IMG/VR virus record: IMGVR_UViG_3300045256_000050
Location: 1 to 64,000 of that record
Direction: 5' to 3' (one strand)
Length of the DNA: 64,000 nt
The position numbers were made by a program, and so were the translations under genes. Shown here piece after piece: positions 26,242 through 52,467 of the stretch. The notes beneath the pieces are model-generated. The model did no database searches. It saw only the letters and a list, made by a program, of their open reading frames with translations, and had not been told where the DNA came from. Every line of letters starts with the position of its first letter. Within the stretch, counting starts at the first letter, position 1.

Positions 26242-28188
26242 TTATTTCTTGTGTTTGCAGCCCGGCAGGTGGCCCTGCAAGAACAGGTTCGGGCACTTGC
26301 ACTCGTCCGTGGCGTCGGCGATCTGCTCGATGGCGGCGATGCCACGAGTGTCGATGGTCACTTCGCCGAGGACTTCCACGTCCTTCCCCTTGTAGCCCTC
26401 GCAGTAGTCGATGATGACCGTCGGCGACTTGCTGCGGTCCGCCCGGCCGACCATCTGTGCGATATCGGCCTGGGTCGGTTCGACGTGCTTGCCGTCGATG
26501 ATGTTCAACCCCTTCTCCAGCGGAATCTTCGTCTTCAGGGCTTCGGCCGGGACCACCTTCGTCGGGCTGTTCGCCGGGTAGTGTTCCGGCATGACGATGG
26601 GCTGCACGCCGGGCGGCAGGTTCGTCAGTTCGCCGAACTTGACATCGTGCCACTTCACGACCGGCTCGGCCAGGATGTCGTACATCGACCCGGCGGCTTC
26701 CGGCTTGTTCTTCAGGAACTCGTCGAAGACCGGGAAGCCGGTGTGCGACTTCCTCTCGATGACGCCATCATCCTTGCCCTTCCAGGTCATGAGTCGGGTG
26801 ATGTCGCCCATGACGACTCGGGCGTGGCCCGGCCCGTCGGTGAACTCCACGAGGATGTCGCCGCCCAGGAATTCCTTTGTGATCTTACCCTTCCGGTCCT
26901 TGTACTCCATGCCGTCGGCGAAGTACGTTACTTCGTCGTTCAGCTTCGGCATGTTCGGCCGGTTGGTGATCGCCAGCTTGAAGGCGTCAAACCCGCACGG
27001 TTCTTCGTGAGCGGCTTGGTTGTCGAGCATCACGAACACCCAATCGTCCTTCTTCTTGCCGACGCTGACGACGGTGCCCTCCTGCCCCTTGCTCGACCCG
27101 TGCCGCAGGATCACCCGGTCGTATCGCTGGAACTCCGTCGCTACAGGGAGTTTCGTAACTTGACATTCGTGACAAGTTACGGACTTCATCATGTAGTTGC
27201 AGAGGTTGATGGCGAACCGCTTCGGGCCGAAGGCGGGCCACGTCTTGCCGTCGTCGATGGCGGCGATCTGGCCGTGTTCGCCCTTGTGTTCGCCGTTGAG
27301 GATTTCGACGTAATCCCCGACGGCGTAGAGGTTACGTTCCCTGATCTCCCCGCCTCGCAGCTTCTCCATGTACTCCAGGCTGGCGGGAAGCGGCTCCTGC
27401 ATCAGCTTGACGGTTCGCATGTACTCCTTCTTCATCACCGGATGGATGCCTTCACTGACGCCGTGCATGACCCGGAACTGCTGGCTTTCCGGGGACGGCT
27501 TGACGCAGGTGACGGTCTTGGCTTCCGGGATGTCCAGAAGGTCGGCCATGTCGGCACACGCCTTCTGCATCGCCTCCTTGCGTGCCTCCGTGGCCTTCTT
27601 CATATAGATGCTGTCGCCTTCGTGGAAGACGAAGTATTCCTGCGGTTCCAGGGGGTTCGGCTTGGTGAAGAGATTGCAGATGGTCAGCCACGCCTCTTCG
27701 ATGCGGAACGGCCATGCGTCCTTGCCGCTGTGAATGGAGAGGGCGGTGAACTGCCGCTTGTACGCCTCGATCTTCTTCTCTTGCTTCTTGCAGATCGCCT
27801 TGCGGATGGCGTCACATTGTTCTTCGAGGAAGCCGACTTCGACGAGCATCTGGTTGGCTTCGGCGACTTCCTTCGTCCGCTCCATCACCTTGTCCATGAC
27901 GCCGAGGCGGTGCCGCAGGGTTTCCCGGCCTGCGATGGGCGGGAGGAAGCGGATGGTCTGCCCCTTCAGGTTGTTGATGTCGAACATCTTCTTGTCAACG
28001 ACCTTGCCGTCTTCACCAATGACAGTGGGTTCGGCGACGGCATCGGCAGCCTCGACGGCTTCGCCGTAGGCCCGCTTGATGTCGGACATGGGGATGCTGG
28101 TTGTTTTCTTGGGGTCGTCGTTCATGTATGTCTCCCGGTGAGCGTTGAGCCAGAGGGCACGAGCCGCAGCGTATGAGTAGTGAGTCAT
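26242..28188 (-). CDS. Large multidomain protein with tandem KOW/SH3-like motifs
   Basis: 'VGDYVEILNGEHKGEHGQI', 'DRVILRHGSSKGQEGTVV' and a third similar unit; start moved to 28188 (ATGA overlap). Confidence 0.8.
   Translation of the reverse strand: MTHYSYAAARALWLNAHRETYMNDDPKKTTSIPMSDIKRAYGEAVEAADAVAEPTVIGEDGKVVDKKMFDINNLKGQTIRFLPPIAGRETLRHRLGVMDKVMERTKEVAEANQMLVEVGFLEEQCDAIRKAICKKQEKKIEAYKRQFTALSIHSGKDAWPFRIEEAWLTICNLFTKPNPLEPQEYFVFHEGDSIYMKKATEARKEAMQKACADMADLLDIPEAKTVTCVKPSPESQQFRVMHGVSEGIHPVMKKEYMRTVKLMQEPLPASLEYMEKLRGGEIRERNLYAVGDYVEILNGEHKGEHGQIAAIDDGKTWPAFGPKRFAINLCNYMMKSVTCHECQVTKLPVATEFQRYDRVILRHGSSKGQEGTVVSVGKKKDDWVFVMLDNQAAHEEPCGFDAFKLAITNRPNMPKLNDEVTYFADGMEYKDRKGKITKEFLGGDILVEFTDGPGHARVVMGDITRLMTWKGKDDGVIERKSHTGFPVFDEFLKNKPEAAGSMYDILAEPVVKWHDVKFGELTNLPPGVQPIVMPEHYPANSPTKVVPAEALKTKIPLEKGLNIIDGKHVEPTQADIAQMVGRADRSKSPTVIIDYCEGYKGKDVEVLGEVTIDTRGIAAIEQIADATDECKCPNLFLQGHLPGCKHKK
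27150..27166. repeat. Dispersed motif GTTTCGTAACTTGACA, copy 1
   Basis: Exact copies at 51823-51838 and, reverse-complemented, at 30845-30860. Confidence 0.85.
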
Positions 28189-28421
28189 GTGCGGTACTTG
28201 GCGTACTTCTTCTGGATGTAGGGGTCGTGCGGGAACTCTTCGAGCATCCTCAGCCCGGCCCGCCTGTCCAAGCGGTGTAACAGGAAGCAGGCCGGGGTGA
28301 GGAGTGCGACGACGGCGAGGAAGTAGAGGATCGGGAGGAAGCTGAGCTTGACGATGGACAACATCAGCACGAAGCCGATGACGAGCCAGCCGTTCAGGTT
28401 CGGTCCTTCCACGATCTTCAT
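28185..28421 (-). CDS. Small membrane protein
   Basis: Two hydrophobic segments. Confidence 0.7.
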   Translation of the reverse strand: MKIVEGPNLNGWLVIGFVLMLSIVKLSFLPILYFLAVVALLTPACFLLHRLDRRAGLRMLEEFPHDPYIQKKYAKYRT

Positions 28422-28424
28422 GAC

Positions 28425-28871
28425 TCACTCGCTTTCGTAGTTCACGGCTTCAACCTCGAACGGGGCTTGGTGGTAGCCGTAGTGCAGAACTTGTTCCAGG
28501 TAGAGGGCCAGGAACGTCATCATGTCGCCCACCCTTTCGACCTGAAGGACGTGCCCGAGTTCGTGGCGAATGAGCCGGGGCGTTTCGTGTCCTTCAGTAA
28601 TCAGGATGCCGTACCCGAGGGTAAGTCCGGCAGCCATCTCGATGTCGAGCAGGTCTTTACTCAGTAGCTCCAGCCCTTCCGGCGGTGGGGGCATCTGTGC
28701 TACAGTTAGCACACGAACGAGATCGGGGCGTAGGATTCCGATTTTGGACGCAAACGCAGTCTCGTCCGGGGTGAGTTCTCTGCCGTGGGCGAGGACGTTG
28801 GCTCGGTTGGCCTCGGCCCAGGGTATGACGGCAGGCAGAATCTCACTCAGCGGCAGCGGGTTCGACGGCAT
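28425..28871 (-). CDS. HExxH metallopeptidase-like protein (DUF4157-like)
   Basis: 'GLTLGYGI...LIRHELGHVLQ...PFEVEA'. Confidence 0.8.
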   Translation of the reverse strand: MPSNPLPLSEILPAVIPWAEANRANVLAHGRELTPDETAFASKIGILRPDLVRVLTVAQMPPPPEGLELLSKDLLDIEMAAGLTLGYGILITEGHETPRLIRHELGHVLQVERVGDMMTFLALYLEQVLHYGYHQAPFEVEAVNYESE

Positions 28872-29181
28872 CGGTCTTCTCCTCCACAGTGGCGTCCGGG
28901 GGAGCGGTTGTGGGCGTGGGGGTGGCGGCGGGCTTGTCCTCTTTGCCCGAGGACAATTCTACCAACCAACCGATCTTGTTGCCGCTGAACTTGGCCGGAA
29001 TGTTGGTCGGCAGGGTGGCGAGCTTGGTGATCTCGCTCCACGGGATGACCGGGAGCTTCCGCTTGCCCTTGTGGAAGGCGACACCGGCCTCGGACACGGT
29101 GACGCACACGTCACCCTTGCACCCGTTGATGTCTTCGACCGTCAGTTCCCGCACAACGGGCTTGGTGAGCTTGGTTGCCAT
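28843..29181 (-). CDS. Hypothetical protein
   Basis: GAGGAG RBS; first gene after the promoter. Confidence 0.8.
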   Translation of the reverse strand: MATKLTKPVVRELTVEDINGCKGDVCVTVSEAGVAFHKGKRKLPVIPWSEITKLATLPTNIPAKFSGNKIGWLVELSSGKEDKPAATPTPTTAPPDATVEEKTDAVEPAAAE

Positions 29182-29219
29182 TTCTCTCCTCGTGTGGTTA
29201 GTGCCGTCTAGGCAGGGTT

Positions 29220-29248
29220 AAGATACAGCCCACTCCCGCTGGTGTCAA
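29220..29248 (-). promoter_or_regulatory. Sigma70-type promoter
   Basis: Minus strand TTGACA-N17-TATCTT upstream of the leftward operon. Confidence 0.65.
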
Positions 29249-29343
29249 ATCAAACCGCCCGGTTCAGGGCTGACCTGAATGGGTTTTCGTCACAAACAAC
29301 ACCCGCTGAGGCTAGATATTAGGAGTTCGTATTGGAGAAACAA

Positions 29344-29766
29344 ATGCGGGATTTCAATGAGTTCCTTATCGAGAACGACCAGCGGGTGTTCAACGAGATT
29401 TTCGGCAAGATCGCCGGTGCCCTGGGGATGGGCGGGCCGGAGTGGGTCGGCTACCTGAAGAAGCTGTCGGCCACCCCGGAGGGTCCGGTCGCCCAGCAGA
29501 TGCTCAAGATGTTCACTAAAGGCGTGGACCCGAAGGATTACATGTGGGTCAAGCAGAATCAGAACGACGTGTTCCGCTTCCTCCAGAAGCACCGGAACAA
29601 CCTGGAAGGGATGGGTGTGAACGTAGACGGGTTGATTAAGAAGCTGGGAATCTACGACCCGACCGACTTGGCGATCAAGCAGTCCGGCAATGCTGGCTGG
29701 CTCGGCAACCGGAACGTTTCGGCTCACGACAACCACGCCACGGCGAACGTCAAGAGCCTTCGCTAA
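29344..29766 (+). CDS. Hypothetical protein with a capsid-targeting-like N-terminus
   Basis: GGAG RBS; MRDFNEFLIE start. Confidence 0.75.
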   Translation: MRDFNEFLIENDQRVFNEIFGKIAGALGMGGPEWVGYLKKLSATPEGPVAQQMLKMFTKGVDPKDYMWVKQNQNDVFRFLQKHRNNLEGMGVNVDGLIKKLGIYDPTDLAIKQSGNAGWLGNRNVSAHDNHATANVKSLR

Positions 29767-30101
29767 AACCCGTCTCTCTTCCAATTCACCTTTGGCCTAC
29801 AAGTCCTCTCCCAGAAGTACCAACACGTCCGGGCGAGGGCTTGTATGTTTTCCGGCAGTTCTTCGAGCAGGAAGCGGATGTGGTTGATGAGGGTGCAGGG
29901 CCACTCCTGGCAAATCTCCTCGTTCCGCAGGTAGCAGATCAGGACGCCGGGGGTGACGGGTTCGTATTCACCAAAGTCATTCGCCCAGATCGGGCTGTCG
30001 TGCTGGATGGGGTCTTCGACGCCGCCCCAGATCGACCGAACGAGTAGTTGTTCGGGGGTGGTCAGGTCGCAGGAAAAGTCGGGGTGGATCGCTGTGCGCA
30101 T
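29763..30101 (-). CDS. Hypothetical protein
   Basis: Convergent ORF with plausible composition. Confidence 0.65.
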   Translation of the reverse strand: MRTAIHPDFSCDLTTPEQLLVRSIWGGVEDPIQHDSPIWANDFGEYEPVTPGVLICYLRNEEICQEWPCTLINHIRFLLEELPENIQALARTCWYFWERTCRPKVNWKRDGF

Positions 30102-30528
30102 ACCAGGGGCCGTAAGGTGAAAGACAACAGATCATAGTAAAGACTAAATCTCTATCTGTTATAATAGAGAGCGCCCGGTAGGGCGCAGCCTCGACTATGA
30201 CCCATGCACTCAGTAAAGTGCGCATGGCGTCGTACTTCCACAGTCAAGTGGTTTTAAGTAGCTGTTGTGTTTGGGTTTCCAAACCTTCTCCGCTGCACGC
30301 TACCCCGATTGACTAGGCGTGCATTTACGGCATTAAGGGGTGCGGAGTCGGAATACCTCCACCCGGCGATTGGGTCTGAGTCGTCTGGTTACAACTACCC
30401 TGGTCCCCGAAGGGTCGCTAAGGTTTTTCTTCGCCCACCCCCTGGCGGCTACTCGGCCGGGGCTTCGGGCGCACAGTTCCCAGACATCTTAAACAACAAA
30501 TCGGCCCCGTCAACACTACTTTCAAAAT

Positions 30529-31008
30529 ATGCTGACCCAACTCACCGAAAACCACGTTGACGCCGTTCTGGGCATCTGCCAGCAGTGCTACCCCAACCCC
30601 GAGTATTGGGAGACTCGCACCAACGTCATGACTAAGCTGCACAACTACTCGCCGGGCTGCATCGGGTGGGAGGAGGACGGCAAGCTCGTCGCTTACTACC
30701 TGTTCTGGCCGTGGAACAAGGTCCGCTCCTACCCGCTCGACCGGGAGGACTGCTGGCTCAACAACCAGCAGCCGACGGTCATGTACAGCCACGACATCTG
30801 CATACTTCCATCATACCGTGGAAAAGGAATTGCGCAAGAGCTTTTGTCAAGTTACGAAACCCAGGCGAGGGAACTCGGCCTGCGGGTCGGCGTAGGTACT
30901 GCCGTGCGTGGGACTTGGGTGTTGTGGAAGAGATGGGGCTGGGAGCCGGTCGAGCGGGTGAACTACGGCCCGGAAGAGGCGTGGCTAATTTTGAAGTTTC
31001 TCTCTTGA
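30529..31008 (+). CDS. GNAT-family acetyltransferase
   Basis: Motif A 'ICILPSYRGKGIAQELL' and C-terminal 'WKRWGW'. Confidence 0.85.
   Translation: MLTQLTENHVDAVLGICQQCYPNPEYWETRTNVMTKLHNYSPGCIGWEEDGKLVAYYLFWPWNKVRSYPLDREDCWLNNQQPTVMYSHDICILPSYRGKGIAQELLSSYETQARELGLRVGVGTAVRGTWVLWKRWGWEPVERVNYGPEEAWLILKFLS
30845..30860. repeat. Dispersed motif TGTCAAGTTACGAAAC, copy 2
   Basis: Reverse complement of the 27150 and 51823 copies. Confidence 0.85.
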
Positions 31009-31076
31009 CTTCTTGTTACGCTTCTGGTTTATTACACAACTCAAGTTGAAAGTAACGAAACACAAGGAAGTGTAAC

Positions 31077-31811
31077 ATGGCAAAGCTGAACCAGATCATC
31101 GCCGTCGTCAACGGCAAGAAGACCAAGACCCAGAAGCAGGTCACGGACGTTTACCACAACCTCCAGAAGCCGACCTTGTTCGAGGGCATCTCCCGGACCT
31201 ACCGCCCGTCCGACGAGGACGGCGAGACGTTCCCGCCGGAAAAGAAGCTCGTTCAGTACAAGGTGCAGGACGCCGTTCGGGAAGTCCGTGAGGCTCTTAC
31301 GGAACTCTGGGACGTGACCGCAACCCAGGATTGGGCGAACTGCAAGGCCGTCGCCGACGTGAAGGTGGACGGGAAGGTTCTGTTGCTCAAGGTGCCGGTG
31401 ACTCACCTGCTGTTCCTTGAGAAGCAGTTGACCGACCTGCACACGTTCGTGTCCAAGCTGCCGACGCTCGACTCGGCCGAAAAGTGGAACTTCTCCCAGG
31501 AGGCCGACGCCTTCCAGTCCGAGGAGTCCCGCACGAACAAGACCAAGAAGGTCATGCGGAACCACGTCAAGGCTGCGGCCACGGACAAGCACCCGGCCCA
31601 GGTCGATGTCTATACTGAGGACGTGAAGGTGGGCGAGTGGGCCACGATCAAGTTCTCGGGTGCGATCCAGGTCAAGAAGAAGAACGAGATGCTGGAGCGG
31701 GTCGCCAAGCTCCAAGAGGCGGTCAAGTTCGCCCGTGAAGAGGCGAACAACCTTGAGGTCGAAAACCAGTCCGTCGCCGCCCCGGTGCTGGACTTCGTGT
31801 TCGGCAAGTAA
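31077..31811 (+). CDS. Conserved helical hypothetical protein (MAKLNQIIAV family)
   Basis: Strong resemblance to a bacterial conserved family (...ISRTYRP...LLFLEKQL...HPAQV...VKFAREEAN). Confidence 0.9.
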   Translation: MAKLNQIIAVVNGKKTKTQKQVTDVYHNLQKPTLFEGISRTYRPSDEDGETFPPEKKLVQYKVQDAVREVREALTELWDVTATQDWANCKAVADVKVDGKVLLLKVPVTHLLFLEKQLTDLHTFVSKLPTLDSAEKWNFSQEADAFQSEESRTNKTKKVMRNHVKAAATDKHPAQVDVYTEDVKVGEWATIKFSGAIQVKKKNEMLERVAKLQEAVKFAREEANNLEVENQSVAAPVLDFVFGK

Positions 31812-31837
31812 GGCCAGAACAAAATTTGTGACCCAAA

Positions 31838-31874
31838 AACACCCCAGCCGTTGACCCTTGTCCGGCTGGGGTGT
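31838..31874 (+). terminator. Hairpin, possible terminator
   Basis: ACACCCCAGCCG...CGGCTGGGGTGT. Confidence 0.5.
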
Positions 31875-31936
31875 ATCGTTATGAGAACACTCGATGACTA
31901 TCTCGCCCCCGCCATAACGCACTTTGGGTTCCGAAG

Positions 31937-33070
31937 ATGTGGGATGTTTTCACGGATGTCTCTGGGTTCGTTCCTCGCCGAGTCTGCGGTGCCTGGACGA
32001 ACGAGTTGATCGCACTGCATAACGTCTCTGACATTCTGATCGGGGTTTCATATCTCCTCATCCCCCTGTTCATCTGGAAATTCGTCCGGGCGAAACCGGG
32101 GATGAAGTTCTCCCTGATCTTCTACGCCTTCTGTGACTTCATCGTGTCGTGCGGCCTGACACACTTCATGGATGTGGCCCTCTTCTACTGGCCCAACTAC
32201 AGGCTGGCCGGGATCATCAAGCTGGTCTGCGGGGTTGTTTCCTTCAGTACAGTCATCCTGCTGTTCAGAATGTACCCACTCGCCGTCAAGATGATCCAGA
32301 CGCCGAGGGAGATACGGGAGAGGACCGAGACGCTATCCCAGAAGAACGACGCCCTGGAGAAGCAGAACGGGCATCTTGTCTTCGAACAAAAAGCGAAGGA
32401 CGACTTCCTGGCGATCCTCGGCCACGAACTCCGCAACCCACTCGCCGCCGTTTTCAACGCAAAACAACTTCTGGAACGGGACTCGGCCAAGAGCCGGGAA
32501 CTCGGGATGAAGATACTGGAGAACCAGATCGACCACCTGAACCGGCTGGTGGACGACATCATCAACGTCGCTCGTGCCGTCCAGGGTCGGCTGGAGTTGA
32601 GGCAGGACAAAACGTGTGCCCGTCAGATCATCGAGCGGGCGATGGAACTCGCCGCAGCCACCATCAAGAAGCACAAGTGCGTGGTGAGTGTCGAACAACC
32701 GCCGGAAGACCTGTGCTTTGTTGCCGATGAGATGCGCATGGCTCAGGTTGTGAGCAACCTGCTTACCAATGCTGCGAAGTATGGGCACGAAGGCGGCAAA
32801 ATCGAAGTTACTGTTACCTGCGAGGGTGGTATACTCCACCTATCAGTTCGAGATTACGGCATCGGCATCGGGCCGGAGAAGCTGGACACCATCTTCGGAC
32901 TCTGTGTCCGAACGGAACGTGCTGCCAAGAAGGCGGACGGTATGGGCGTCGGACTGGCGATGGTCCGGGCGATTGTCGAGCTTCATGGCGGTCATGTCAG
33001 TGCTAAGAGCAACGGCGTCGAGCAAGGGGCTGAGTTCCTGGTCACGATACCAATCACGGAGGTAGCATGA
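31937..33070 (+). CDS. Sensor histidine kinase with an ethylene-receptor-like 3-TM input domain
   Basis: H-box HELRNPL, N-box NLLTNAAKY, G1 DYGIGI, G2 GMGVGL; N-terminal SDILIGVSYLLIP...FIVSCGLTH resembles the ETR1 ligand-binding domain. Confidence 0.9.
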   Translation: MWDVFTDVSGFVPRRVCGAWTNELIALHNVSDILIGVSYLLIPLFIWKFVRAKPGMKFSLIFYAFCDFIVSCGLTHFMDVALFYWPNYRLAGIIKLVCGVVSFSTVILLFRMYPLAVKMIQTPREIRERTETLSQKNDALEKQNGHLVFEQKAKDDFLAILGHELRNPLAAVFNAKQLLERDSAKSRELGMKILENQIDHLNRLVDDIINVARAVQGRLELRQDKTCARQIIERAMELAAATIKKHKCVVSVEQPPEDLCFVADEMRMAQVVSNLLTNAAKYGHEGGKIEVTVTCEGGILHLSVRDYGIGIGPEKLDTIFGLCVRTERAAKKADGMGVGLAMVRAIVELHGGHVSAKSNGVEQGAEFLVTIPITEVA

Positions 33071-33408
33071 ACATCGTCCTTGTAGAAGACCACGACGACA
33101 TCGCCGACTCCAGCATGATGCTTCTCGATATGCTCGGGCATCAAGTCACGAGGGTGAAGACGGGCCTGGAAGCTGTGGAGTTGGCGAAGTCGGTGGTGCC
33201 TGACTGCTTCATCGTGGACATTGGCCTTCCCGACATCCCCGGCACCGAGGTTTGTAAGCGAATCCGCTGCCAGCCCGCTCATTACAAAACGCTGATGGTG
33301 GCGGTGAGCGGCTACGACATCAGCAACGAGGCGAAGGAGATCGGCTTCGATCAGGCGTTCAAGAAACCCGTCGATTACACCCGTCTCTTCCCGGCCGTCA
33401 CGAACTAA
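33067..33408 (+). CDS. Single-domain response regulator (CheY-like)
   Basis: VEDHDD, DIGLPD, SGY and KPV receiver motifs; ATGA overlap with the kinase. Confidence 0.92.
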   Translation: MNIVLVEDHDDIADSSMMLLDMLGHQVTRVKTGLEAVELAKSVVPDCFIVDIGLPDIPGTEVCKRIRCQPAHYKTLMVAVSGYDISNEAKEIGFDQAFKKPVDYTRLFPAVTN

Positions 33409-33412
33409 ACGA

Positions 33413-33447: not shown

Positions 33448-33458
33448 GGGAACTCCGC

Positions 33459-45646: not shown

Positions 45647-45685
45647 TGCTGTCATGCAAGTGGCCCAACCCCACGGAGGCAAAAC

Positions 45686-46240
45686 ATGCAGGTCAACGGA
45701 TACGAACTCCGGGAGGCGATGAAGCGGTGGAACACGCTCCGCAACATCGCCGCCGCCCAACACAAGGACTCGATCTTCGTCTTCGAGGGCGACGAGAACC
45801 CGTCCCTCGGCGATGTCATCAAGCGGTTCGTCGAGGCCGACAACGCCTACTCCAAGCTGCAAGAAGTGCAGCAGTGGTACAACTCGCTCGTCCAGGTCAA
45901 CTACAAGGGGCTGGACGGCAAGCCGGTCACGTCCACGCTCGCCTTCGCCGTGAAGGCCGTCGGCGGGGCGGGCCGGATCGAGAAGATGTGGCGTGACGCC
46001 TGTTCCGAGAAGCAGGATCGCTACGGCTGCTACCGTCAGGAGCGGGAGCGTGACCCGTCCAAGACCTACGCCAAGCGGGCCATTCCCATCGCCGAGGCGA
46101 TGAAGATGGCCGACCACGCCAGCAAGTACGCCATGACCCTGCGTCAAGCCATCGCCCGTGCCAACACAACCCAGGTCGAAGTGACGACCGGCAAGGGGTG
46201 CCCGATCACCCCGGAGGAACTGGAAAAGCTCCTGAGCTAA
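45686..46240 (+). CDS. Coiled-coil hypothetical protein
   Basis: GGAGG RBS; helical composition. Confidence 0.8.
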   Translation: MQVNGYELREAMKRWNTLRNIAAAQHKDSIFVFEGDENPSLGDVIKRFVEADNAYSKLQEVQQWYNSLVQVNYKGLDGKPVTSTLAFAVKAVGGAGRIEKMWRDACSEKQDRYGCYRQERERDPSKTYAKRAIPIAEAMKMADHASKYAMTLRQAIARANTTQVEVTTGKGCPITPEELEKLLS

Positions 46241-46259
46241 TCCAGGGAACCCGGCGTGA

Positions 46260-46437
46260 AGAGTAGAGACGATTACACAATTACCCTCGTAACGAAGGTG
46301 GTGGACTACTGATAGGGCTGCCGTCCGTCTCGTAGCTAAATACCCGTCAGCCGCATCCCACGGCACAGTCGGGTGATTGCAAAGGACGCCAGGGGTCGCC
46401 TACTGTAAGTCACCTGCTCGTAGCTGATCTCTACTCT
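46260..46437 (+). ncRNA. Candidate structured RNA or leader upstream of metG
   Basis: 10-bp closing helix AGAGTAGAGA/TCTCTACTCT, followed by a hairpin at 46439-46468. Confidence 0.4.
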
Positions 46438-46491
46438 CGGACCCCGGTTGGGCAACTGGCCGGGGTCCACTTTCGTACAAAGGAGGCTGCC

Positions 46492-48141
46492 GTGAACCGT
46501 TGGAACAAGTTCTACATCACCACCGCCATTGACTACCCGAACGCCCTCCCGCACAACGGCACGGCGTTCGAGAAGATCGGTGCCGACGTGCAGGCCCGGT
46601 TCCGCCGGTTCTGCGGCTTCCACCCGTTCCTCCTGATGGGGAACGACGAGAACACCGTTAAGGTGGTCAAGGCCACGCCCGAAGGGCTGACGACGCAAGA
46701 GTACGTCGATAACATGGCCGTCGCCTTCATGCACGAGTGGCAGAAGCTCGGCATCGACTACTCGGCCTTCCTCCAGACCAGCAAGGACCGGCACCGGCAG
46801 GGCGTCGAGAAGTTCATCAACGCCGTCTGGGCCAGCGGCTACATCGAGAAGCGGCCGTACACCGCCCTGTACTGCGAGGGGTGCGAGGAATTCAAGACCC
46901 CGAAGTCGCTCGACTACGCCAAGCGGTGCCCGCACCACCAGAACACCCCGGTCGTGGAAGTGACCGAGGAGAACTACTTCTTCAAGTTGTCGGCCTTCAA
47001 GGACCGGCTGCTCGACTACTACAAGAAGGCGGAAATCTTCCCGGAGGCCCGCCGCAACGAGATGCTTGACTTAGTGCAGACCGAACTGCACGACATGAGC
47101 ATCAGCCGTTCGAGCCGGGGCTGGGGCATCCCGGTGCCGTTCGACACGACGCAGACGATCTACGTCTGGTTCGACGCCCTCCTGAGCTACCTGACCGGCG
47201 TCGGGTTCGGCTGGGATTGGGGGATGTTCAAGAACCTCTGGCCCGCCGACGTGCATGTGATCGGGAAGGACATCACCCGGTTCCACTGCACCCTCTGGCC
47301 TGCGATGATTATGGCCTACAACGAGGTAGTGCAGAACCAGCACTCCATCGGCCTCGCCGAAGAACTGCCCGTGATCGACCTGCCGAAGCAGGTGTTTTCC
47401 CACGGCTTCATCTACCGGAAGAAGGGGCACGAACTCGTCCGGGAGTCGAAGACGGACGCCGAGTCGAACCTGGGGCCGCTCGTCGAGGAGTTCGGGGCCG
47501 AGGCGTACCGCTACTACTTCATGGCGAAGTGCCCGTTCGGTGCGGACGGCGAGTACAGCAGGGACCACATTCGGGAAGTGTACAACGCCGACTTGGCGAA
47601 CAACCTGGGGAACTTGGTCAACCGCTCCATCCAGATGATCGTGAAGTACGGCGGCGGGAAGTTGCCGTTCGGCAAGACGGAGAAGGTCTGGCTCGACCCG
47701 AAGACGATGACCGACTTCCGCACCGACATGGCGTTGTTCAACTACCGAGCCGCCCTGACGACCATCTGGAACATCCTGCACCGGGCGAACGAGTACATCG
47801 AGGCGAACAAGCCCTGGGAGTTGACAAAGACCGACCAGGGCAAGTGCCTGGACGTGCTGAGGGAACTCGTCGCCGCCCTGCGGATCGTGTCCCTGATGCT
47901 CAAGCCGTTCATGCCGGGGACTGCGGCCAAGATCGCCGTGGCTCTCGGTCTGAAGGACTGGCCGAACATGACCTTCGGAGACTTGGCCCGGATCGCTCAC
48001 TACAACGGAGATGGGCTGGGTGAGGTTCAAGTCGAACCCATCCAGCCGCTCTTTCCTCGTTCTGTCGCCCCGGTCCAAAAAGAACCGAAAGGACCGGGTA
48101 AGGTCAAAGGCACGCCGGGAACTGAACCGGCTGCTGGCTGA
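46492..48141 (+). CDS. metG: Methionyl-tRNA synthetase (short form) with variant signature motifs
   Basis: YITTAIDYPN, CxxCE knuckle, YVWFDAL, IGKDI.RFH, N.DLANNLGNL.NR; HIGH appears as HNGT, KMSKS as RESKT. Confidence 0.93.
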   Translation: MNRWNKFYITTAIDYPNALPHNGTAFEKIGADVQARFRRFCGFHPFLLMGNDENTVKVVKATPEGLTTQEYVDNMAVAFMHEWQKLGIDYSAFLQTSKDRHRQGVEKFINAVWASGYIEKRPYTALYCEGCEEFKTPKSLDYAKRCPHHQNTPVVEVTEENYFFKLSAFKDRLLDYYKKAEIFPEARRNEMLDLVQTELHDMSISRSSRGWGIPVPFDTTQTIYVWFDALLSYLTGVGFGWDWGMFKNLWPADVHVIGKDITRFHCTLWPAMIMAYNEVVQNQHSIGLAEELPVIDLPKQVFSHGFIYRKKGHELVRESKTDAESNLGPLVEEFGAEAYRYYFMAKCPFGADGEYSRDHIREVYNADLANNLGNLVNRSIQMIVKYGGGKLPFGKTEKVWLDPKTMTDFRTDMALFNYRAALTTIWNILHRANEYIEANKPWELTKTDQGKCLDVLRELVAALRIVSLMLKPFMPGTAAKIAVALGLKDWPNMTFGDLARIAHYNGDGLGEVQVEPIQPLFPRSVAPVQKEPKGPGKVKGTPGTEPAAG

Positions 48142-48436
48142 CCACAGCTACAGTTGCTATTGGTGCAATGCCAAGCTGGTCAACGCCGACACCATACCCC
48201 ACGAGGTTGTGGTGCGGCGTAGTCCGACGGTGTTGTACTGGCGGATCGAAACGGGCGAGATCGTCTCCTGTAAGATGGCGACGGTCGATCACCTGAAGGA
48301 GATCAGTCAGGGCGGCGGCAACGAGAGCAGCAATCTCGTTCCGTCCTGCGGAAGCTGCAACTGGCGGCGGTCGGGCGATCCCGAGAAGTTCCGTAAGAGG
48401 ATGCTGCACCATCCGTTCTACAAGGGACAGTCATGA
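48011..48436 (+). CDS. HNH endonuclease (start uncertain; overlaps the metG 3' end)
   Basis: CYWC...ATVDHL...GG.N...NLVPSCGSCN. Confidence 0.8.
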   Translation: MGWVRFKSNPSSRSFLVLSPRSKKNRKDRVRSKARRELNRLLADHSYSCYWCNAKLVNADTIPHEVVVRRSPTVLYWRIETGEIVSCKMATVDHLKEISQGGGNESSNLVPSCGSCNWRRSGDPEKFRKRMLHHPFYKGQS

Positions 48437-48633
48437 TCCGCTGGTTCCTCGGCCTCTTCAAGAAGAAGCAGAAGACGCTCGTCTGCATTCGACAGTCCCA
48501 GACGTTCCACTGGCCCGTCGGCCTGGGGGAGCAAACGCCTGGGACGTGTGCCGAGTGCGGGGCGGCGATCTTCTACGAGAAGCAGAACGAGGACTACCGG
48601 AAGATTTGCAATCGGTGCGCAGGGATGTTCTGA
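48433..48633 (+). CDS. Small Zn-ribbon protein
   Basis: CAEC and CNRC motifs; ATGA overlap. Confidence 0.7.
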   Translation: MIRWFLGLFKKKQKTLVCIRQSQTFHWPVGLGEQTPGTCAECGAAIFYEKQNEDYRKICNRCAGMF

Positions 48634-48651
48634 TTTCGCCTACATAGAAGC

Positions 48652-49305
48652 ATGTTAAGCTTCCGTGCATGGTTTGAAGTCAACTACCCGAAAGAACTCG
48701 ACGATTTCGACCCGACTGATTTCGCCGGTCGGGAAGCCTCCATTCAGCAGAGGATGAAGGAGAAGGGCGAGGACTGGTTCACCGCCGGTTCCGCCCCGAC
48801 GGACTACAAGGTCCGCCGAGCCGAAGTCATCAAAGCCTGGAACCACATCGTCAAGACCCTATTCCCCGGCGGTGAGTTCACCGGCAACCTGGACACGGGT
48901 CCGGGCAACGTGATGAACTACAGCATCAAGATGGGGCCACGGGGCGTCATCTTCTCTCTTCACGAAGACAAGTACGGCAAGAACCTGTACGCCACGGTGG
49001 ACTTCGGCTGGGACGAGATGCCCGCAGAGTTGAGCCAGAAGGACGCTGACAACGTGAGCGGCGGGGACGCCAACGTAGCCGCTAAGAGCGTTCAGCCGGG
49101 GTCCATGACTTTCATGCGTACCCTGGAGCGGTACGCTGCGGCCTGCCAGAAGTACGGCATCCGGTTCATCTTCAACGCCTCGGACGAGGGCGACACGTCA
49201 CGCCGGGTGCCGGTGTACGGGAAGGTGTTGAAGCGGGCGGGCTACGAGCCGGTGAATGTTTACCGCCGCCGTAACACATTCAAGCCAGCCGGAAGCACCT
49301 ACTGA
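48652..49305 (+). CDS. Hypothetical protein with a capsid-targeting-like N-terminus
   Basis: MLSFRAWFE start; CTACATA immediately upstream. Confidence 0.8.
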   Translation: MLSFRAWFEVNYPKELDDFDPTDFAGREASIQQRMKEKGEDWFTAGSAPTDYKVRRAEVIKAWNHIVKTLFPGGEFTGNLDTGPGNVMNYSIKMGPRGVIFSLHEDKYGKNLYATVDFGWDEMPAELSQKDADNVSGGDANVAAKSVQPGSMTFMRTLERYAAACQKYGIRFIFNASDEGDTSRRVPVYGKVLKRAGYEPVNVYRRRNTFKPAGSTY

Positions 49306-49337
49306 TCCGACGGTTATGGCTTTTCAGAAAATCCTGC

Positions 49338-49366
49338 TTGACAGCATCTCCGGCCTCTGAGATAGT
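49338..49366 (+). promoter_or_regulatory. Sigma70-type promoter
   Basis: TTGACA-N17-GATAGT. Confidence 0.5.
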
Positions 49367-49451
49367 TGGGCCACTCTACAACTTTTGTACTCGGCCCTAA
49401 CGACTCCCGTATGGAGCGGGAGCCGTCGTATCTCTAGTTGGAGGAGTACGG

Positions 49452-49721
49452 ATGGCACAGGATGTTGCGGCCAGGGACGACGACGTTGACCTGTTCGCCG
49501 ACACGGTGTTGTTTGAACCCGGCGAAGTGACGGTGGTGGACGAGAAGGCGATGGCGTTGTTACAGAAGAACCGCCGTGATCGTGTGGTGGCGACGGTCGT
49601 TCAACTGGTGATGGACATGTTCATTACGACCGGGATTCCGCCCCAATACTTCCCCGGCACGGAGCCGTTCAAGCGGCTGATGACCCAGGTTCGGGCGACG
49701 ATGATCGCCCACGACTTCTAA
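49452..49721 (+). CDS. Hypothetical protein
   Basis: GGAGGAG RBS. Confidence 0.75.
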   Translation: MAQDVAARDDDVDLFADTVLFEPGEVTVVDEKAMALLQKNRRDRVVATVVQLVMDMFITTGIPPQYFPGTEPFKRLMTQVRATMIAHDF

Positions 49722-49742
49722 TCGGTGTCCGCCCACACCGAG

Positions 49743-49775
49743 AACGGCCCGGCTGGAGTTCCAGCCGGGCCGTTT
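49743..49775. terminator. Hairpin between convergent genes
   Basis: AACGGCCCGGCTGGA/TCCAGCCGGGCCGTT. Confidence 0.65.
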
Positions 49776-49777
49776 GT

Positions 49778-50179
49778 TTACTTCTTCGGTTCGGTCAAGA
49801 TGTCCGGTACGAGCGGGACGATCCGGCTCGGTCCCAACTGCTTCTTGACGTTGTGGTACTCGTCGGCGGGAATCAGGACCGGCATGTACCCTTCGGGGTA
49901 GACGATTACCCTGTCGATCTGTCGGCCGGTGACTTTGTAGTATTCCTCCAGCCGCTTCGACGCCTCCTTCTGGGCAGGCGTGATGTCGTTCCCGTAGTAC
50001 ATCACGGTGAAGAATCCGTCGTAGTTGGCGACGGGCTTCTCGGGCATCTTCTGTGGAACGCCCTTCTCCTGAAGTTCCTTCAGTTTCTCGGGTGGGATCG
50101 GGTTCTCGAATCCCGGCTTCTCCTGCCCGAAAGCGAAAGTCAGCCCGAGTGCAAACAAACCGACGTGGACCCACTTCAT
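49778..50179 (-). CDS. Secreted hypothetical protein
   Basis: Signal peptide MKWVHVGLFALGLTFAFG; AAGGAG RBS. Confidence 0.8.
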   Translation of the reverse strand: MKWVHVGLFALGLTFAFGQEKPGFENPIPPEKLKELQEKGVPQKMPEKPVANYDGFFTVMYYGNDITPAQKEASKRLEEYYKVTGRQIDRVIVYPEGYMPVLIPADEYHNVKKQLGPSRIVPLVPDILTEPKK

Positions 50180-50198
50180 GTCTACTCCTTAGTGAAGG

Positions 50199-50672
50199 TT
50201 ACTTGGCCTTCTTCTTGGCCTTGCTCACACCGTCTGCGAACAACTCGACATCCTTCCGCCACAGACCGTGCCGCTCCACGATGGCGTTGAACTCCTCCAG
50301 GTCGTGCGGGATGATCTTCAGCTTCTTCACGCCGTCCTCGTCTTCCTCGACCCCGGCGTGACACAGTTCGTGATCGACCAGGGCCACCTTGTCCTCGTGG
50401 GACAGTTGCTCCCACACGGGCAGGGTGATCGTCATGCAGAAGAAGTCGGACGTAAAACCGTCAGCCTGATCCTCGGCAGGGGCGGCGAGGTAGGCGGGCA
50501 ACGCCCCGATCTTCCGCATGGTGCCCCATACCTGCTTGTTACCCTTGTTCGGGATTTTGTCAATGAAAACGTACTCGATCCGCACATCGACAAGATGCGG
50601 GTGGTACTCGGGGATGAGTTCTTGAGCGATTTTTTGAACATCGGGTGCAGGGGTGAACTTCTTGCCAGCCAT
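50199..50672 (-). CDS. Putative phage metallopeptidase
   Basis: 'ALVDHELCH...HDLEEF..IV.RHG.W' motif. Confidence 0.85.
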   Translation of the reverse strand: MAGKKFTPAPDVQKIAQELIPEYHPHLVDVRIEYVFIDKIPNKGNKQVWGTMRKIGALPAYLAAPAEDQADGFTSDFFCMTITLPVWEQLSHEDKVALVDHELCHAGVEEDEDGVKKLKIIPHDLEEFNAIVERHGLWRKDVELFADGVSKAKKKAK

Positions 50673-50701
50673 CTTTCGCCCTCCGTGGCGTATATAAGGT
50701 C

Positions 50702-51679
50702 ATGGACAAACGCATCGCACTTTTGGTTGTAAACCTCGCCCTGATCGTAGGAAACGTTGGTGCGTTCTTCTACCTCAAGGACAAGCACAGCCGTCGGCAC
50801 GCTGAACGGCCACCTGTTGTTCAGGTACAGCCGCCGGTCAACCCCCAGCCGGTACAGCCCACGCCGCCGCCGGAAGTCAAACCCAAGATTTCGTTTACTA
50901 TACCAAACGGGGACATGTCCTTCCAGGCCATTCGCACGCAACTCCAGACCTGGGCGAAGGAGGCTCCAAGCATTGTGGAATACGGAACTTACGGTAAGTC
51001 ACAGAACGGCACCGAGCATCCGTACATCCGGGTCGGCAAGAAGACCGGGCCGAAGGTGTTGATCCACGCCTGCATCCACGGGAACGAACACCTGTCCGCA
51101 ATGGTGGCGATGGGCGTGTTCGGTAAGATGCTCGACGCCTACATGGTCGATCCCGAGGTTACGAAACTGTTCAGCGAGCGGGACATCTATTTTGTGCCCG
51201 TGTTTTCGGTCGAGAGTTTCCAGCGGAACAGCCGTCACGACATGGGCAAAGACCCGAACCGAAACTGGAGTGACGCCCGGAACAACGACGTGCCGTCCAT
51301 TCCCTCGGTGCAGTCGATGAAGGACTTCTTCAAGGCGAACCAGTTCAAGGCCGTGATGTCGTGTCACAACTACGGCAAGGTCTACCTCTACCCGTGGGGC
51401 TACGTCCAGCAAAAAACCCCGCACGACGCCGCCTACCGCTCGATCCTGGGCGAGATGGCGAGCGTGACCGGGTACAAGTACGAGCAGCTTCTTCGTCAAT
51501 CCGCACCGCCCTACTACGGGTACGAGGCCGACTGGTACTACAAGAACGGGGCGCTCGCATTCGTGAACGAGATCGGCACCCGGTTCGAGGCCACCGGCCC
51601 GGAGATCAGGACCGAAGTCGAGAAGAACTACAAAGCGTTCATGATCTTCATCAACAAGGCTCCGGTCGCCATGCGGTAA
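50702..51679 (+). CDS. M14 zinc carboxypeptidase with an N-terminal anchor
   Basis: HGNE, DPNRNW, SCHNY, YPWG and a C-terminal catalytic E. Confidence 0.88.
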   Translation: MDKRIALLVVNLALIVGNVGAFFYLKDKHSRRHAERPPVVQVQPPVNPQPVQPTPPPEVKPKISFTIPNGDMSFQAIRTQLQTWAKEAPSIVEYGTYGKSQNGTEHPYIRVGKKTGPKVLIHACIHGNEHLSAMVAMGVFGKMLDAYMVDPEVTKLFSERDIYFVPVFSVESFQRNSRHDMGKDPNRNWSDARNNDVPSIPSVQSMKDFFKANQFKAVMSCHNYGKVYLYPWGYVQQKTPHDAAYRSILGEMASVTGYKYEQLLRQSAPPYYGYEADWYYKNGALAFVNEIGTRFEATGPEIRTEVEKNYKAFMIFINKAPVAMR

Positions 51680-51774
51680 ACGAAGGCGTCCCCGTCTTAG
51701 GAAGGACGGGGACGGAGGGGAATTGAAGTAGGACGGGATAGCGGCCTCGGAGCGTGACCCTGAACGAGTCACCT

Positions 51775-52467
51775 TCAGATAGTCTCCTCGGCCTGACGGA
51801 TGACGGGGACGGCCAGCGGGCCGTTTCGTAACTTGACATCGAACTCGTTGGTGATGTACGGCTTGCCCCAACGGTTCTTGTGCATGAAGACGGTGTGCTT
51901 GCCGTCTTCGTCTTTTTTGATCTTGAAGGCGTTGCTGGCGAAGAACATCGGGCCGTAGCCGAACGGGGCCATCTCGTTCGTCATGATGTAGGGTTCGCCC
52001 CACATGTGCATGATGACCGGCTCACGGGTCTGGACGACGCCGATGATGACCGACTGCTCACGCCAGGACTTCTGCACCAGCCGGTGCGTCAGTCGGGCCA
52101 TCACCTTCGCACGGGGCGGAAAGATGGACTCCCCTTCGGCGTTCTCGTAGCCGTAGGCGATCTCGTCCTGCATGTCGTCGTGGATTTCGAGCTTGGGCGC
52201 ACGCACGCCGAGGGCCAGTTGTTGAAGGACGTTCTCGTACTGAATGCGGTTGACGAACGCCGTCTTGCCGCTCGCCAGTCGGCCGGTGACGAGGATGAAT
52301 GAGCCGGTGTGAAGTCCGCCGCCCAGGTTGTCGTCGAATTCCGGGAACCCGGTTGGGATGCGGTCCGTCTGATAGTGTTGGGCACCGGGGTGAGCGATGG
52401 CCCGGCCGTTCAGGGCGAGGGCGGCACCGGACAGACCGAGAACCTTGAGGAAGGTGCGACGGAACAT
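51775..52467 (-). CDS. RecA/DnaB/KaiC-like P-loop ATPase with a Tat-like N-terminal signal
   Basis: MFRRTFLKVLG...AIA; IPTGFPEFDDNLGGG, GRLASGKT, KNRWG. Confidence 0.75.
   Translation of the reverse strand: MFRRTFLKVLGLSGAALALNGRAIAHPGAQHYQTDRIPTGFPEFDDNLGGGLHTGSFILVTGRLASGKTAFVNRIQYENVLQQLALGVRAPKLEIHDDMQDEIAYGYENAEGESIFPPRAKVMARLTHRLVQKSWREQSVIIGVVQTREPVIMHMWGEPYIMTNEMAPFGYGPMFFASNAFKIKKDEDGKHTVFMHKNRWGKPYITNEFDVKLRNGPLAVPVIRQAEETI
51823..51839. repeat. Dispersed motif GTTTCGTAACTTGACAT, copy 3
   Basis: 17/17 identity with 27150-27166. Confidence 0.85.

What the first reader, a model, noticed from the sequence alone, without database searches (positions are those of the whole stretch)
27150..51839. 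An exact 16-bp sequence embedded in three unrelated genes in three different reading frames
Seen: TGTCAAGTTACGAAAC occurs on the sense strand of the KOW-motif gene (27150-27165, read CQVTKL), the GNAT gene (30845-30860, read LSSYET) and the RecA-like ATPase gene (51823-51838, read DVKLRN). The different frames mean the constraint acts on the nucleic acid, not the protein. The core GTCAAGTTAC also forms the inverted repeat at the putative origin (4705-4758), a tandem pair at 25498-25517, and a near-copy beside the 27150 site (27170-27180). Three exact AT-rich 16-mers in 64 kb of GC-rich DNA are not expected by chance. Inference: binding sites for a genome-organising protein (parS/matS-like, initiator or repressor) or an RNA-level signal.
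Basis: partly seen in the sequence, partly recalled or inferred. Interest (0 to 1): 0.72.

Follow-up and report, generated by a model that had tools for sequence, protein, structure and literature searches.

The report
Conserved DNA-binding sites embedded in phage genes
An 11-16 bp DNA word scattered through an uncultivated 245-kb phage, inside three genes and between others, is kept letter for letter in distantly related phages and is most likely the binding site of a small phage-encoded two-helix-turn-helix regulator whose own gene starts with two copies of it.

Summary
TGTCAAGTTACGAAAC occurs exactly three times in the 244,986-bp virus genome. All three copies lie in the window, on the sense strand of three unrelated genes, in three reading frames. 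The core TGTCAAGTTAC has 8 exact copies (GTCAAGTTAC 9) against about 0.06 expected.

The copies are under selection at the nucleotide level. In four KOW-gene homologues sharing only 35-47% protein identity, the palindrome GTAACTTGTCA-N4-TGTCAAGTTAC keeps every synonymous position. The tandem pair before the M23 peptidase gene is invariant in three such phages.

Outside the window, at 199,724-199,758, two more copies abut the start codon of a 106-aa protein with two helix-turn-helix motifs. Both copies are invariant in six relatives.

Best reading: these are double-stranded DNA operators of this self-regulating bipartite HTH protein, a small dispersed regulon like phage P1 C1 or plasmid RK2 KorA. 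Binding is inferred, not shown.

No RNA structure or Rfam family fits, and no fixed -10 element accompanies the motif. An origin or partition role stays open: the global GC-skew minimum (4728) falls between the arms of the 4705-4758 inverted repeat, about 3 bp from its centre.

This is a new member of a known kind, of moderate interest.

The parts
27150..27165 (-). Exact 16-mer TGTCAAGTTACGAAAC inside the KOW-motif gene, read CQVTK(L). It is the right arm of a 26-bp palindrome.
   Evidence: The codons TGT CAA GTT are identical in four homologues of 35-47% protein identity.
27170..27180 (+). Near-copy TGACAAGTTAC, the left arm of the KOW palindrome (sense strand GTA ACT TGT CA). The single mismatch is forced, because a perfect arm would create an in-frame TGA stop.
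   Evidence: The codons GTA ACT TGT are identical in all four homologues.
30845..30860 (+). Exact 16-mer inside the GNAT acetyltransferase gene (read LSSYET). A single site.
   Evidence: It is absent from the L032 homologue (LLTVFEE there), so it is lineage-specific.
51823..51838 (-). Exact 16-mer near the 3' end of the RecA/DnaB-like ATPase gene (read DVKLRN, using the rare codons TTA and CGA). A single site.
   Evidence: It is kept exactly in relative L035 (84% nucleotide identity).
25497..25517 (+). Tandem pair TGTCAAGTTAC-GTCAAGTTAC. Together with the ribosome-binding site it fills the 34-nt gap between a 57-aa gene and the M23 peptidase gene. It is antisense to the direction of transcription.
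   Evidence: The pair is invariant in G000, L031 and L032.
4705..4716 (-). Left arm (TGTAACTTGACA on the + strand) of the inverted repeat in the 325-bp non-coding gap 4602-4926.
   Evidence: The global cumulative GC-skew minimum (4728) lies between the arms.
4747..4758 (+). Right arm TGTCAAGTTACA of the same inverted repeat.
20069..20079 (+). One-mismatch copy TGTCAAGTCAC overlapping the stop codon of gene 20076..20375 (-). The syntenic place in relative L031 holds a perfect palindrome GTAACTTGACA-TCAG-TGTCAAGTTAC.
26242..28125 (-). KOW-motif, Cys-rich gene (627 aa) that hosts the deeply conserved palindrome.
30529..31008 (+). GNAT acetyltransferase gene that hosts a single site.
51775..52467 (-). 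RecA/DnaB-like P-loop ATPase gene that hosts a single site.
24797..25486 (-). M23 peptidase gene. Its ribosome-binding site and start codon directly follow the tandem pair, so it is a candidate regulated gene.

Best explanation
TGTCAAGTTAC, in its full form TGTCAAGTTAC-R-AAA-Y, is a double-stranded DNA recognition site for a sequence-specific phage protein. The most likely binder is the 106-aa protein encoded at genome 199,758-200,078, outside the window. It has two helix-turn-helix subdomains joined by a flexible linker. A monomer of that kind would read an asymmetric site of 11-16 bp, one HTH per half. This explains why copies work singly, as direct repeats (10- and 19-bp period), or as inverted repeats (4- and 30-bp spacers).

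Two full sites lie between a conserved promoter-like block and the protein's own ATG, so the protein probably represses its own gene. A tandem pair sits directly before the ribosome-binding site of the M23 peptidase gene. An inverted pair sits in the non-coding gap at 4.7 kb in the early-gene array. These probably block or modulate transcription there. The intragenic copies (KOW palindrome, GNAT, ATPase) are further binding sites written into coding sequence using rare codons. They may act as roadblocks, looping partners or titration sites.

Shown: the copies exist, they are far beyond chance, and they are under nucleotide-level purifying selection. A conserved two-HTH protein gene carries conserved copies at its start. 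Inferred: that this protein is the binder, and that the outcome is transcriptional repression.
For: 1. Counts are far above chance.
2. In the KOW gene, six of the seven invariant, degenerate amino-acid columns within the motif keep one identical codon in four homologues of 35-47% identity. Elsewhere the figure is 18 of 94 (p = 6e-4). The two 11-mers are the two longest runs of nucleotide identity in the whole gene alignment: 11 and 11 nt, the next being 7. The frozen codons are non-preferred ones (GTA 7%, ACT 10%, TGT 31%, CAA 27%, GTT 18% of their synonymous sets).
3. The tandem pair before the M23 gene is invariant in three diverged phages.
4. At 199,724-199,758 two copies abut the ATG of a protein with HTH_23 (aa 16-34) and HTH_7 (aa 46-85). 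In six relatives both 15-mers are invariant while the 4-nt spacer between them varies.
5. Both predicted recognition helices (VSERTVRRW and NVSHxAISKI) and the linker GWGPKL are invariant in the six proteins.
6. The AlphaFold2 model shows two helical subdomains. The nearest solved folds are bipartite DNA-binding domains (Cbp1, SETMAR/Mos1/Tc3, Pax). Atlas look-alikes are small phage two-HTH DNA binders.
7. The motif and the HTH gene co-occur. KOW and HTH homologues come from the same run, SRR29270595, and from the same SRR284940xx series.
8. The motif lies in either orientation relative to transcription and the copies share no RNA fold, which points to recognition of duplex DNA.
9. All unpaired sites (GNAT, ATPase, and the ATPase homologue in L035) carry the full 16-mer, whereas in paired sites outside the HTH leader, at most one arm does. 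This fits binding-energy logic.
Against: No binding test was possible: the complex prediction was not folded. The Foldseek matches are weak (E >= 0.1, TM about 0.3) and the model is of moderate quality (pLDDT 70). The HTH protein is not more conserved than its structural neighbours. No canonical sigma-70 promoter was found next to any site, so the operator-promoter geometry is unknown. The promoter-like motifs I propose (ATAGATA, TATATA) are themselves only inferred. The role of the lone intragenic sites is unexplained, and the GNAT site is not conserved in L032. A host factor or another phage protein could be the binder.
Confidence: 0.55

Rival explanations
1. Replication-origin or genome-organisation signal. 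The inverted repeat at 4705-4758 marks an origin (iteron-like), or the dispersed copies act as centromere, looping or condensation sites in the manner of parS/matS. They would be bound by the same HTH protein or by another one.
For: The genome-wide cumulative GC-skew minimum is at 4728, between the arms of the inverted repeat and about 3 bp from its centre. This is in a 325-bp non-coding gap although the genes on both sides are co-directional. Seven of nine exact core copies lie within 4.7-52 kb. Intragenic, nucleotide-conserved binding sites are known for origins and for parS (established knowledge: ori-lambda inside gene O; Bacillus parS inside spo0J).
Against: No locus has more than two copies, and none has an adjacent AT-rich unwinding region. 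The skew is positive over about 235 of 245 kb, so it is not a classic bidirectional pattern. The minimum would fall somewhere in this gap anyway if the two gene modules differ in composition. The HTH protein has no ParB N-terminal domain. The core is asymmetric, unlike parS or matS. The sites at the HTH and M23 leaders abut start codons, which suggests control of expression.
Confidence: 0.15
2. Promoter element. The motif would be recognised by a phage activator or sigma-like factor, in the manner of the T4 MotA box or late promoters, so that the intragenic copies are internal promoters.
For: The phage has a T4-like portal, tail sheath and terminase. T4 middle promoters often lie inside upstream genes (established knowledge). 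The HTH protein has weak Sigma70_r4_2 similarity (E = 2e-4, below the Pfam cut-off). The reverse-complement orientation contains TTGACA and TAACTT.
Against: No -10-like element lies at a fixed distance in either orientation (by eye). The ATPase copy would drive only an antisense or convergent transcript. At the HTH gene the copy touches the ATG, and in the M23 leader it touches the ribosome-binding site. The orientation relative to downstream genes is inconsistent. At 106 aa the protein is too small for a sigma factor.
Confidence: 0.12
3. RNA-level signal: a processing site, translational operator or hairpin recognised in the mRNA.
For: The tandem copies sit in 5' leaders directly before the ribosome-binding site or ATG. 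The KOW palindrome can form an 11-bp RNA hairpin.
Against: The mRNA would carry the motif in sense at three genes and in antisense at the two leaders. The single sites share no fold, with z-scores from -0.6 to +1.4. There is no Rfam match. The palindrome shows no compensatory change, only frozen sequence identical to that of the other loci.
Confidence: 0.05
4. Packaging recognition. The HTH protein would be a small terminase and the copies pac-type sites.
For: There are weak PHROG hits to small-terminase HTH regions (phrog_7067, phrog_57) and Atlas look-alikes carrying Terminase_5. Pac sites often lie in or beside the small-terminase gene (established knowledge).
Against: The gene is 83 kb from the large terminase gene (115,235-117,028). 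The protein lacks an oligomerisation domain. Eleven dispersed sites in both orientations are not a pac architecture.
Confidence: 0.05

Closest known systems
Phage P1 C1 repressor and its dispersed asymmetric operators (from my own knowledge, not tested here)
   Same: A phage-encoded repressor reads an asymmetric site of about 17 bp as a monomer. The sites are scattered over the genome, singly or as overlapping or inverted pairs, and include sites that control the repressor gene itself.
   Different: No sequence relationship was detected; Pfam gave only generic HTH families. This phage is a T4-like jumbo myovirus with no evidence of lysogeny. Several sites lie inside coding sequence, and one has been conserved there across deep divergence.
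RK2/IncP KorA and KorB global regulators (from my own knowledge)
   Same: A small autoregulated HTH protein (KorA is about 100 aa) acts through a handful of near-identical operators across a replicon. Some KorB sites lie far from any promoter.
   Different: The KorA and KorB operators are palindromes bound by dimers, whereas this core is asymmetric and the protein has two HTH motifs. There is no ParB-type domain.
Bipartite (paired/Tc3/mariner-type) HTH DNA-binding domains, and the Cbp1 CRISPR-repeat-binding protein
   Same: Two three-helix subdomains joined by a linker, each reading part of a long asymmetric site. These are the best Foldseek and Pfam resemblances.
   Different: The matches are weak (E >= 0.1). 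There is no transposase catalytic domain. The sites are not ends of a mobile element, since flanking sequence is unrelated and the host genes are intact.
ParB-parS and MatP-matS chromosome-organising sites
   Same: Few, highly conserved, partly intragenic sites of 13-16 bp, unevenly placed along the replicon.
   Different: The defining protein domains are absent and the site is not palindromic. See the membership tests.

Membership tests
Autoregulated phage/plasmid global regulator with dispersed operators (functional class; P1 C1 or KorA type) | The regulator gene is preceded by its own operator copies. | tested here: met
   Two full sites lie at 199,724-199,758 and abut the ATG of the two-HTH gene. 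Both are invariant in six relatives.
Autoregulated phage/plasmid global regulator with dispersed operators (functional class; P1 C1 or KorA type) | Near-identical operator copies at several other loci, kept by selection. | tested here: met
   There are 11 sites with at most one mismatch in the genome. The KOW and M23-leader sites are conserved in phages of 35-47% KOW-protein identity.
Autoregulated phage/plasmid global regulator with dispersed operators (functional class; P1 C1 or KorA type) | The protein binds the operator and changes transcription. | not testable with these tools
   The complex prediction was not folded and gives no evidence. EMSA, footprinting or reporter assays are needed.
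Autoregulated phage/plasmid global regulator with dispersed operators (functional class; P1 C1 or KorA type) | Sequence homology to C1 or KorA. | tested here: not met
   Pfam, PHROGs and the PDB profile search returned only generic HTH families; the best PDB hit was the RcsB HTH at E = 0.1.
ParB-parS partition system | The binder carries a ParB N-terminal (CTPase) domain next to its HTH. | tested here: not met
   The 106-aa protein has only HTH matches. No other candidate was searched for across the genome.
ParB-parS partition system | A palindromic 16-bp site. | tested here: not met
   The core TGTCAAGTTAC is asymmetric. Palindromes arise only by pairing two copies.
ParB-parS partition system | Sites clustered around the replication origin. 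| tested here: inconclusive
   Seven of nine exact copies lie within 4.7-52 kb and one pair sits at the GC-skew minimum. The origin itself is unknown.
Iteron-type origin (for example ori-lambda in gene O) | An array of three or more direct repeats beside an AT-rich region. | tested here: not met
   No locus has more than two copies, and no adjacent AT-rich tract was seen.
T4 MotA-box middle promoter | The box is followed at a fixed distance of about 12 bp by a TAnnnT -10 element, and a MotA homologue is present. | tested here: not met
   There is no common downstream element and the scans found no sigma-70-like promoter tied to a motif copy; the one weak match lies on the M23 tandem pair with its -10 over the start codon. 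The HTH protein has no MotA family hit.
Bipartite paired/Tc3-like HTH DNA-binding domain | Two HTH subdomains joined by a linker in one polypeptide. | tested here: met
   HTH_23 at aa 16-34 and HTH_7 at aa 46-85. The model has helices 4-20 and 25-34, then 50-61, 66-73 and 77-84, with a low-confidence linker.
Bipartite paired/Tc3-like HTH DNA-binding domain | Significant structural or sequence match to solved members. | tested here: inconclusive
   The top Foldseek hits are of this kind, but with E from 0.1 to 2 and TM about 0.3. Sub-domain matches reach probability 0.9-1.0.
Structured RNA element (Rfam family or conserved hairpin) | A shared secondary structure or covariance-model match. | tested here: not met
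   The only Rfam match in the window is a tRNA. The fold z-scores are not significant.

The most novel reading that the evidence does not exclude
The motif is the organising signal of a jumbo-phage chromosome rather than a plain operator. The inverted repeat at the exact GC-skew minimum would be the replication origin or centromere. The two-HTH protein, a transposase-like DNA-binding module without a catalytic domain, would anchor or bridge it to the dispersed intragenic copies. The KOW-gene palindrome would then be a dual-coded structural site that has frozen both a zinc-knuckle peptide and its codons across the whole phage lineage.
Probability: 0.13. Interest if true: 0.75.

Novelty: new member of a known kind. 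Interest (0 to 1): 0.5.

Why it matters
This gives a concrete, testable regulatory circuit in an uncultivated lineage of T4-like jumbo phages from hot-spring mats and sludge, where almost every gene is of unknown function. The circuit has one candidate regulator, eleven sites and at least two candidate target genes. One target is an M23 peptidase that may take part in cell-wall attack.

It is also a clean natural case of overlapping codes. A protein-binding palindrome is written into a conserved Cys-x-x-Cys peptide and held at every synonymous position over deep divergence. It deviates from perfect symmetry only where symmetry would create a stop codon. Such sites are useful markers for annotating related metagenomic contigs, and they caution against reading synonymous conservation as neutral.

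Tried and rejected
1. Close relatives in the phage collection: none by megablast or by tblastn with the KOW protein. The large terminase's best hit is 47.5% identical, to an uncultured huge phage.

2. IMG/VR: it holds only a copy of the same phage. The other 16-mer hits there show no similarity to this genome, so they look like chance matches.

3. Metagenome-contig scans with the KOW protein and with its alignment found nothing.

4. Genome-contig scans for the palindrome and for the tandem pair found nothing, so there is no host or prophage clue.

5. A fragment search for partial KOW proteins found nothing.

6. Laying relatives' contigs on 25400-31000 showed relatives at about 85-91% identity. 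The variant table was truncated (516 rows not shown), so it cannot be used for the motif positions. It only shows that the alignments of two runs break at 30838-30940, around the GNAT copy.

7. The protein-DNA complex prediction was not folded.

8. Sigma-70 promoter scans at four site regions found nothing usable.

9. Reading the reverse complement (TTGACA, TAACTT) as -35/-10 boxes was rejected because no spacing works.

10. Mobile-element ends were rejected. The flanks of the three 16-mers are unrelated and the host genes are intact and conserved.

11. The IHF consensus matches only at TCAA (by eye).

12. Codon rarity alone is only mildly unusual: each site falls in the rarest 4-10% of windows.

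13. A literature search for the motif returned only unrelated primers.

14. The genome has no paralogue of the HTH protein.

Full report
**What the window is.** The window is the first 64 kb of a single-contig virus record of 244,986 bp and 58% G+C. The sequence comes from hot-spring or microbial-mat metagenomes. It encodes a T4-like large terminase, a portal protein (with an intein), a baseplate wedge protein and a tail sheath. It has no close relative among deposited phages: the terminase's best match is 47.5% identical, to an uncultured huge phage. No gene finder is offered, so I called genes with a codon-usage model trained on long ORFs with high GC3. This gave 336 genes covering 90% of the genome.

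**Checking the observation.** The 16-mer TGTCAAGTTACGAAAC is at 27150-27165 (-), 30845-30860 (+) and 51823-51838 (-), and nowhere else in the genome. Each copy is on the sense strand of its gene:
- the KOW-motif gene, 26242..28125 (-);
- a GNAT acetyltransferase, 30529..31008 (+);
- a RecA/DnaB-like ATPase, 51775..52467 (-).

The three reading frames differ. Sequence outside the 16 bases is unrelated. The core GTCAAGTTAC has nine exact copies in the genome, and eight of them extend to TGTCAAGTTAC. From base composition I expect about 0.06 copies of the 11-mer. No shuffle or Markov simulation came near the observed counts. Allowing one mismatch adds only 20069-20079, so this is a small family of near-exact sites rather than a degenerate motif.

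**A pair outside the window.** Two further copies, TGTCAAGTTACAAAAC and TGTCAAGTTACAAAAT, lie 19 bp apart at 199,724-199,758. They sit in the divergent gap between a 139-aa gene and a 106-aa gene, and the second copy touches the ATG of the 106-aa gene. That protein has two helix-turn-helix motifs: HTH_23 at residues 16-34 and HTH_7 at residues 46-85. Its best PHROG is 'DNA binding protein'. An AlphaFold2 model (pLDDT 70) shows two small helical subdomains joined by a disordered linker. The nearest solved folds, all weak (E >= 0.1), are bipartite DNA-binding domains: Cbp1, SETMAR/Mos1/Tc3 and Pax. Atlas look-alikes are small phage two-HTH proteins.

**Relatives of the HTH locus.** Five homologues of the HTH protein, 78-85% identical, were found in Logan and JGI assemblies, and their contigs keep the same gene order. 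In the alignment of the intergenic region, both 15-mers TTTTGTAACTTGACA are invariant in all six phages. The four bases between them vary (CGCA, TCCA, CACA, TCGG), as do other flanking positions. In the six proteins, both presumed recognition helices and the linker GWGPKL are invariant.

**Relatives of the KOW locus.** Three KOW-gene homologues of only 35-47% protein identity were found and their DNA was fetched. All three keep the palindrome GTAACTTGTCA-N4-TGTCAAGTTAC at the same place in the gene, and one even keeps the exact 16-mer. The site encodes V-T-C-x-x-C-Q-V-T, which is also conserved as a peptide. The codons GTA ACT TGT .. .. TGT CAA GTT are identical in all four genes, although they are disfavoured codons in this genome. 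Neighbouring conserved residues (L, F, R, V) change their codons freely.
- Six of the seven invariant, degenerate amino-acid columns in the motif keep one codon in all four genes, against 18 of 94 elsewhere (one-sided Fisher p = 6e-4).
- The two 11-mers are the two longest runs of nucleotide identity in the whole gene alignment: 11 and 11 nt, the next being 7.
- The single departure from perfect symmetry (TGTCA against TGACA) is forced, because the symmetric base would create an in-frame TGA.

**The tandem pair at 25.5 kb.** The same three contigs keep the tandem pair in the syntenic place. The gap between the upstream small gene and the next gene consists of little more than stop codon, two copies, ribosome-binding site and ATG, and the 20-nt double site is invariant. 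In this genome the downstream gene is an M23 peptidase. Relative L031 has one more site: a perfect intergenic palindrome with the same 4-nt spacer. It lies where this genome has the one-mismatch copy at 20069.

**The two lone intragenic copies.** The ATPase copy is kept exactly, rare TTA and CGA codons included, in a relative of 84% nucleotide identity. The codon before it changed from GAT to GCT without touching the motif. That whole stretch is conserved, however, so this is not significant by itself. The GNAT copy is absent from the distant homologue in L032 (LLTVFEE instead of LLSSYET), so it is a younger gain or an older loss.

**DNA or RNA.** The motif lies in sense at the three genes and in antisense at both leaders, and in both orientations at the palindromes. 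The loci share no RNA fold (z from -0.6 to +1.4) and there is no Rfam match. The palindrome shows frozen sequence rather than compensatory change. Recognition of duplex DNA by a protein is therefore the economical reading.

**Promoter or operator.** No sigma-70-like promoter sits usefully at any site, and no -10-like element lies at a fixed distance in either orientation. The genome does have candidate promoter words enriched upstream of genes:
- cATAGATAa: 11 of 15 copies are intergenic and correctly oriented, 8-72 nt before a start codon;
- TATATA(a): about 20-35 nt before many start codons, reminiscent of T4 late promoters.

One ATAGATA lies 63 nt before the HTH ATG, inside a conserved block, so the two sites would fall in the transcribed leader. 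A TATATA lies 9 nt before the 57-aa gene that precedes the tandem pair. These placements fit operators or roadblocks better than promoter elements, but they are inference.

**Mechanism proposed.** A monomer with two HTH units would read one asymmetric site, the core plus the RAAAY extension. This accounts for the free arrangement of the copies: singles, direct repeats of 10- and 19-bp period, and inverted repeats with 4- and 30-bp spacers. It also accounts for a regularity in the data. Every unpaired site carries the full 16-mer. Outside the HTH leader, paired sites carry it in at most one arm. The protein would repress its own gene, gate the M23 peptidase gene and act at the 4.7-kb gap in the early-gene array. 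The role of the intragenic copies (roadblock, looping partner or titration site) is open. The closest functional analogues I know are P1 C1 with its dispersed asymmetric operators and RK2 KorA/KorB. This comparison is from my own knowledge. No homology was found.

**What keeps the origin idea alive.** The genome-wide cumulative GC-skew minimum is at 4728, within 3 bp of the centre of the 4705-4758 inverted repeat, in a 325-bp gap between co-directional genes. Against it, there are only two copies, no AT-rich tract, and a skew profile that is positive over about 235 kb rather than split in two halves. I give this rival about 0.15.

**Limits.** Only fragments of the relatives' genomes are available, so co-occurrence of motif and HTH gene rests on shared samples (38, 51). 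The read-laying output was truncated and is not used for the motif positions. The host is unknown.

**Verdict.** The most likely function is a set of operators for an autoregulated bipartite HTH regulator (confidence about 0.55; about 0.85 for 'a protein-binding site on duplex DNA' in general). This is a new member of a known kind of system. It is of moderate interest, chiefly for the deeply conserved dual-coded palindrome and as an entry point into an unstudied jumbo-phage lineage.

Noticed in passing
window 303-16880 (about 40 copies on the + strand) and 20062 (-): The element TGACACCGRCTG-N5-GYGTRA recurs after most small genes of the co-directional early array, and in about half the copies its TGA is the stop codon of the preceding gene. 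It is by far the most repeated word in the genome (26 exact 12-mers). It could be a promoter, a processing site or a cassette junction.
   Followed up: partly
window 4728; whole genome: The cumulative GC skew has its global minimum at 4728, between the arms of the 4705-4758 inverted repeat, and its maximum at 239,837. Only about 10 kb of the genome has negative skew.
   Followed up: partly
genome-wide, for example window 25700, 50691, 62108, 17934, 41325 and 57065: Two words are enriched just upstream of start codons: TATATA(a), about 20-35 nt upstream and like a T4 late promoter, and cATAGATAa, 8-72 nt upstream. They are candidate phage promoter classes.
   Followed up: partly
window 2818-2890 (+): A tRNA gene (Rfam RF00005, 66 bits) among the early genes.
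   Followed up: no
window 26242-28125 (-): The KOW-motif protein (627 aa) is Cys-rich. Besides the CxxC at the palindrome, its homologues have C-terminal CKCG/CTCP modules. It has only four homologues in 5.8 billion proteins, and its function is unknown.
   Followed up: partly
window 4607-4634 and 19952-19980: Two strong hairpins. CGGCTAATAA-N8-TTATTAGCCG follows gene 4383..4601. AACAGCCCAGG-N-CCTGGGCTGTT lies between the convergent genes 17945..19945 (+) and 20076..20375 (-). Both are likely terminators.
   Followed up: no
genome 118,489-121,065 (L014:18489-20000 and onward): The T4-like portal gene carries an intein splicing domain (Pfam Intein_splicing, E = 6e-11).
   Followed up: no
L023-L025 (JGI 3300045256, JGI 3300045107 and Logan SRR35386017): A related phage with much lower G+C (45-47% against 58%) occurs in the same JGI sample (3300045107) as the 100%-identical IMG/VR contig of this phage. 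It keeps the HTH-leader sites unchanged.
   Followed up: partly
window 31077-31811 (+): A DUF7873 protein (Pfam E = 4e-106) lies just downstream of the GNAT gene. It has homologues of 32-51% identity scattered among Gordonia, Arthrobacter, Rhizobium, Vibrio and cyanobacterial phages.
   Followed up: no
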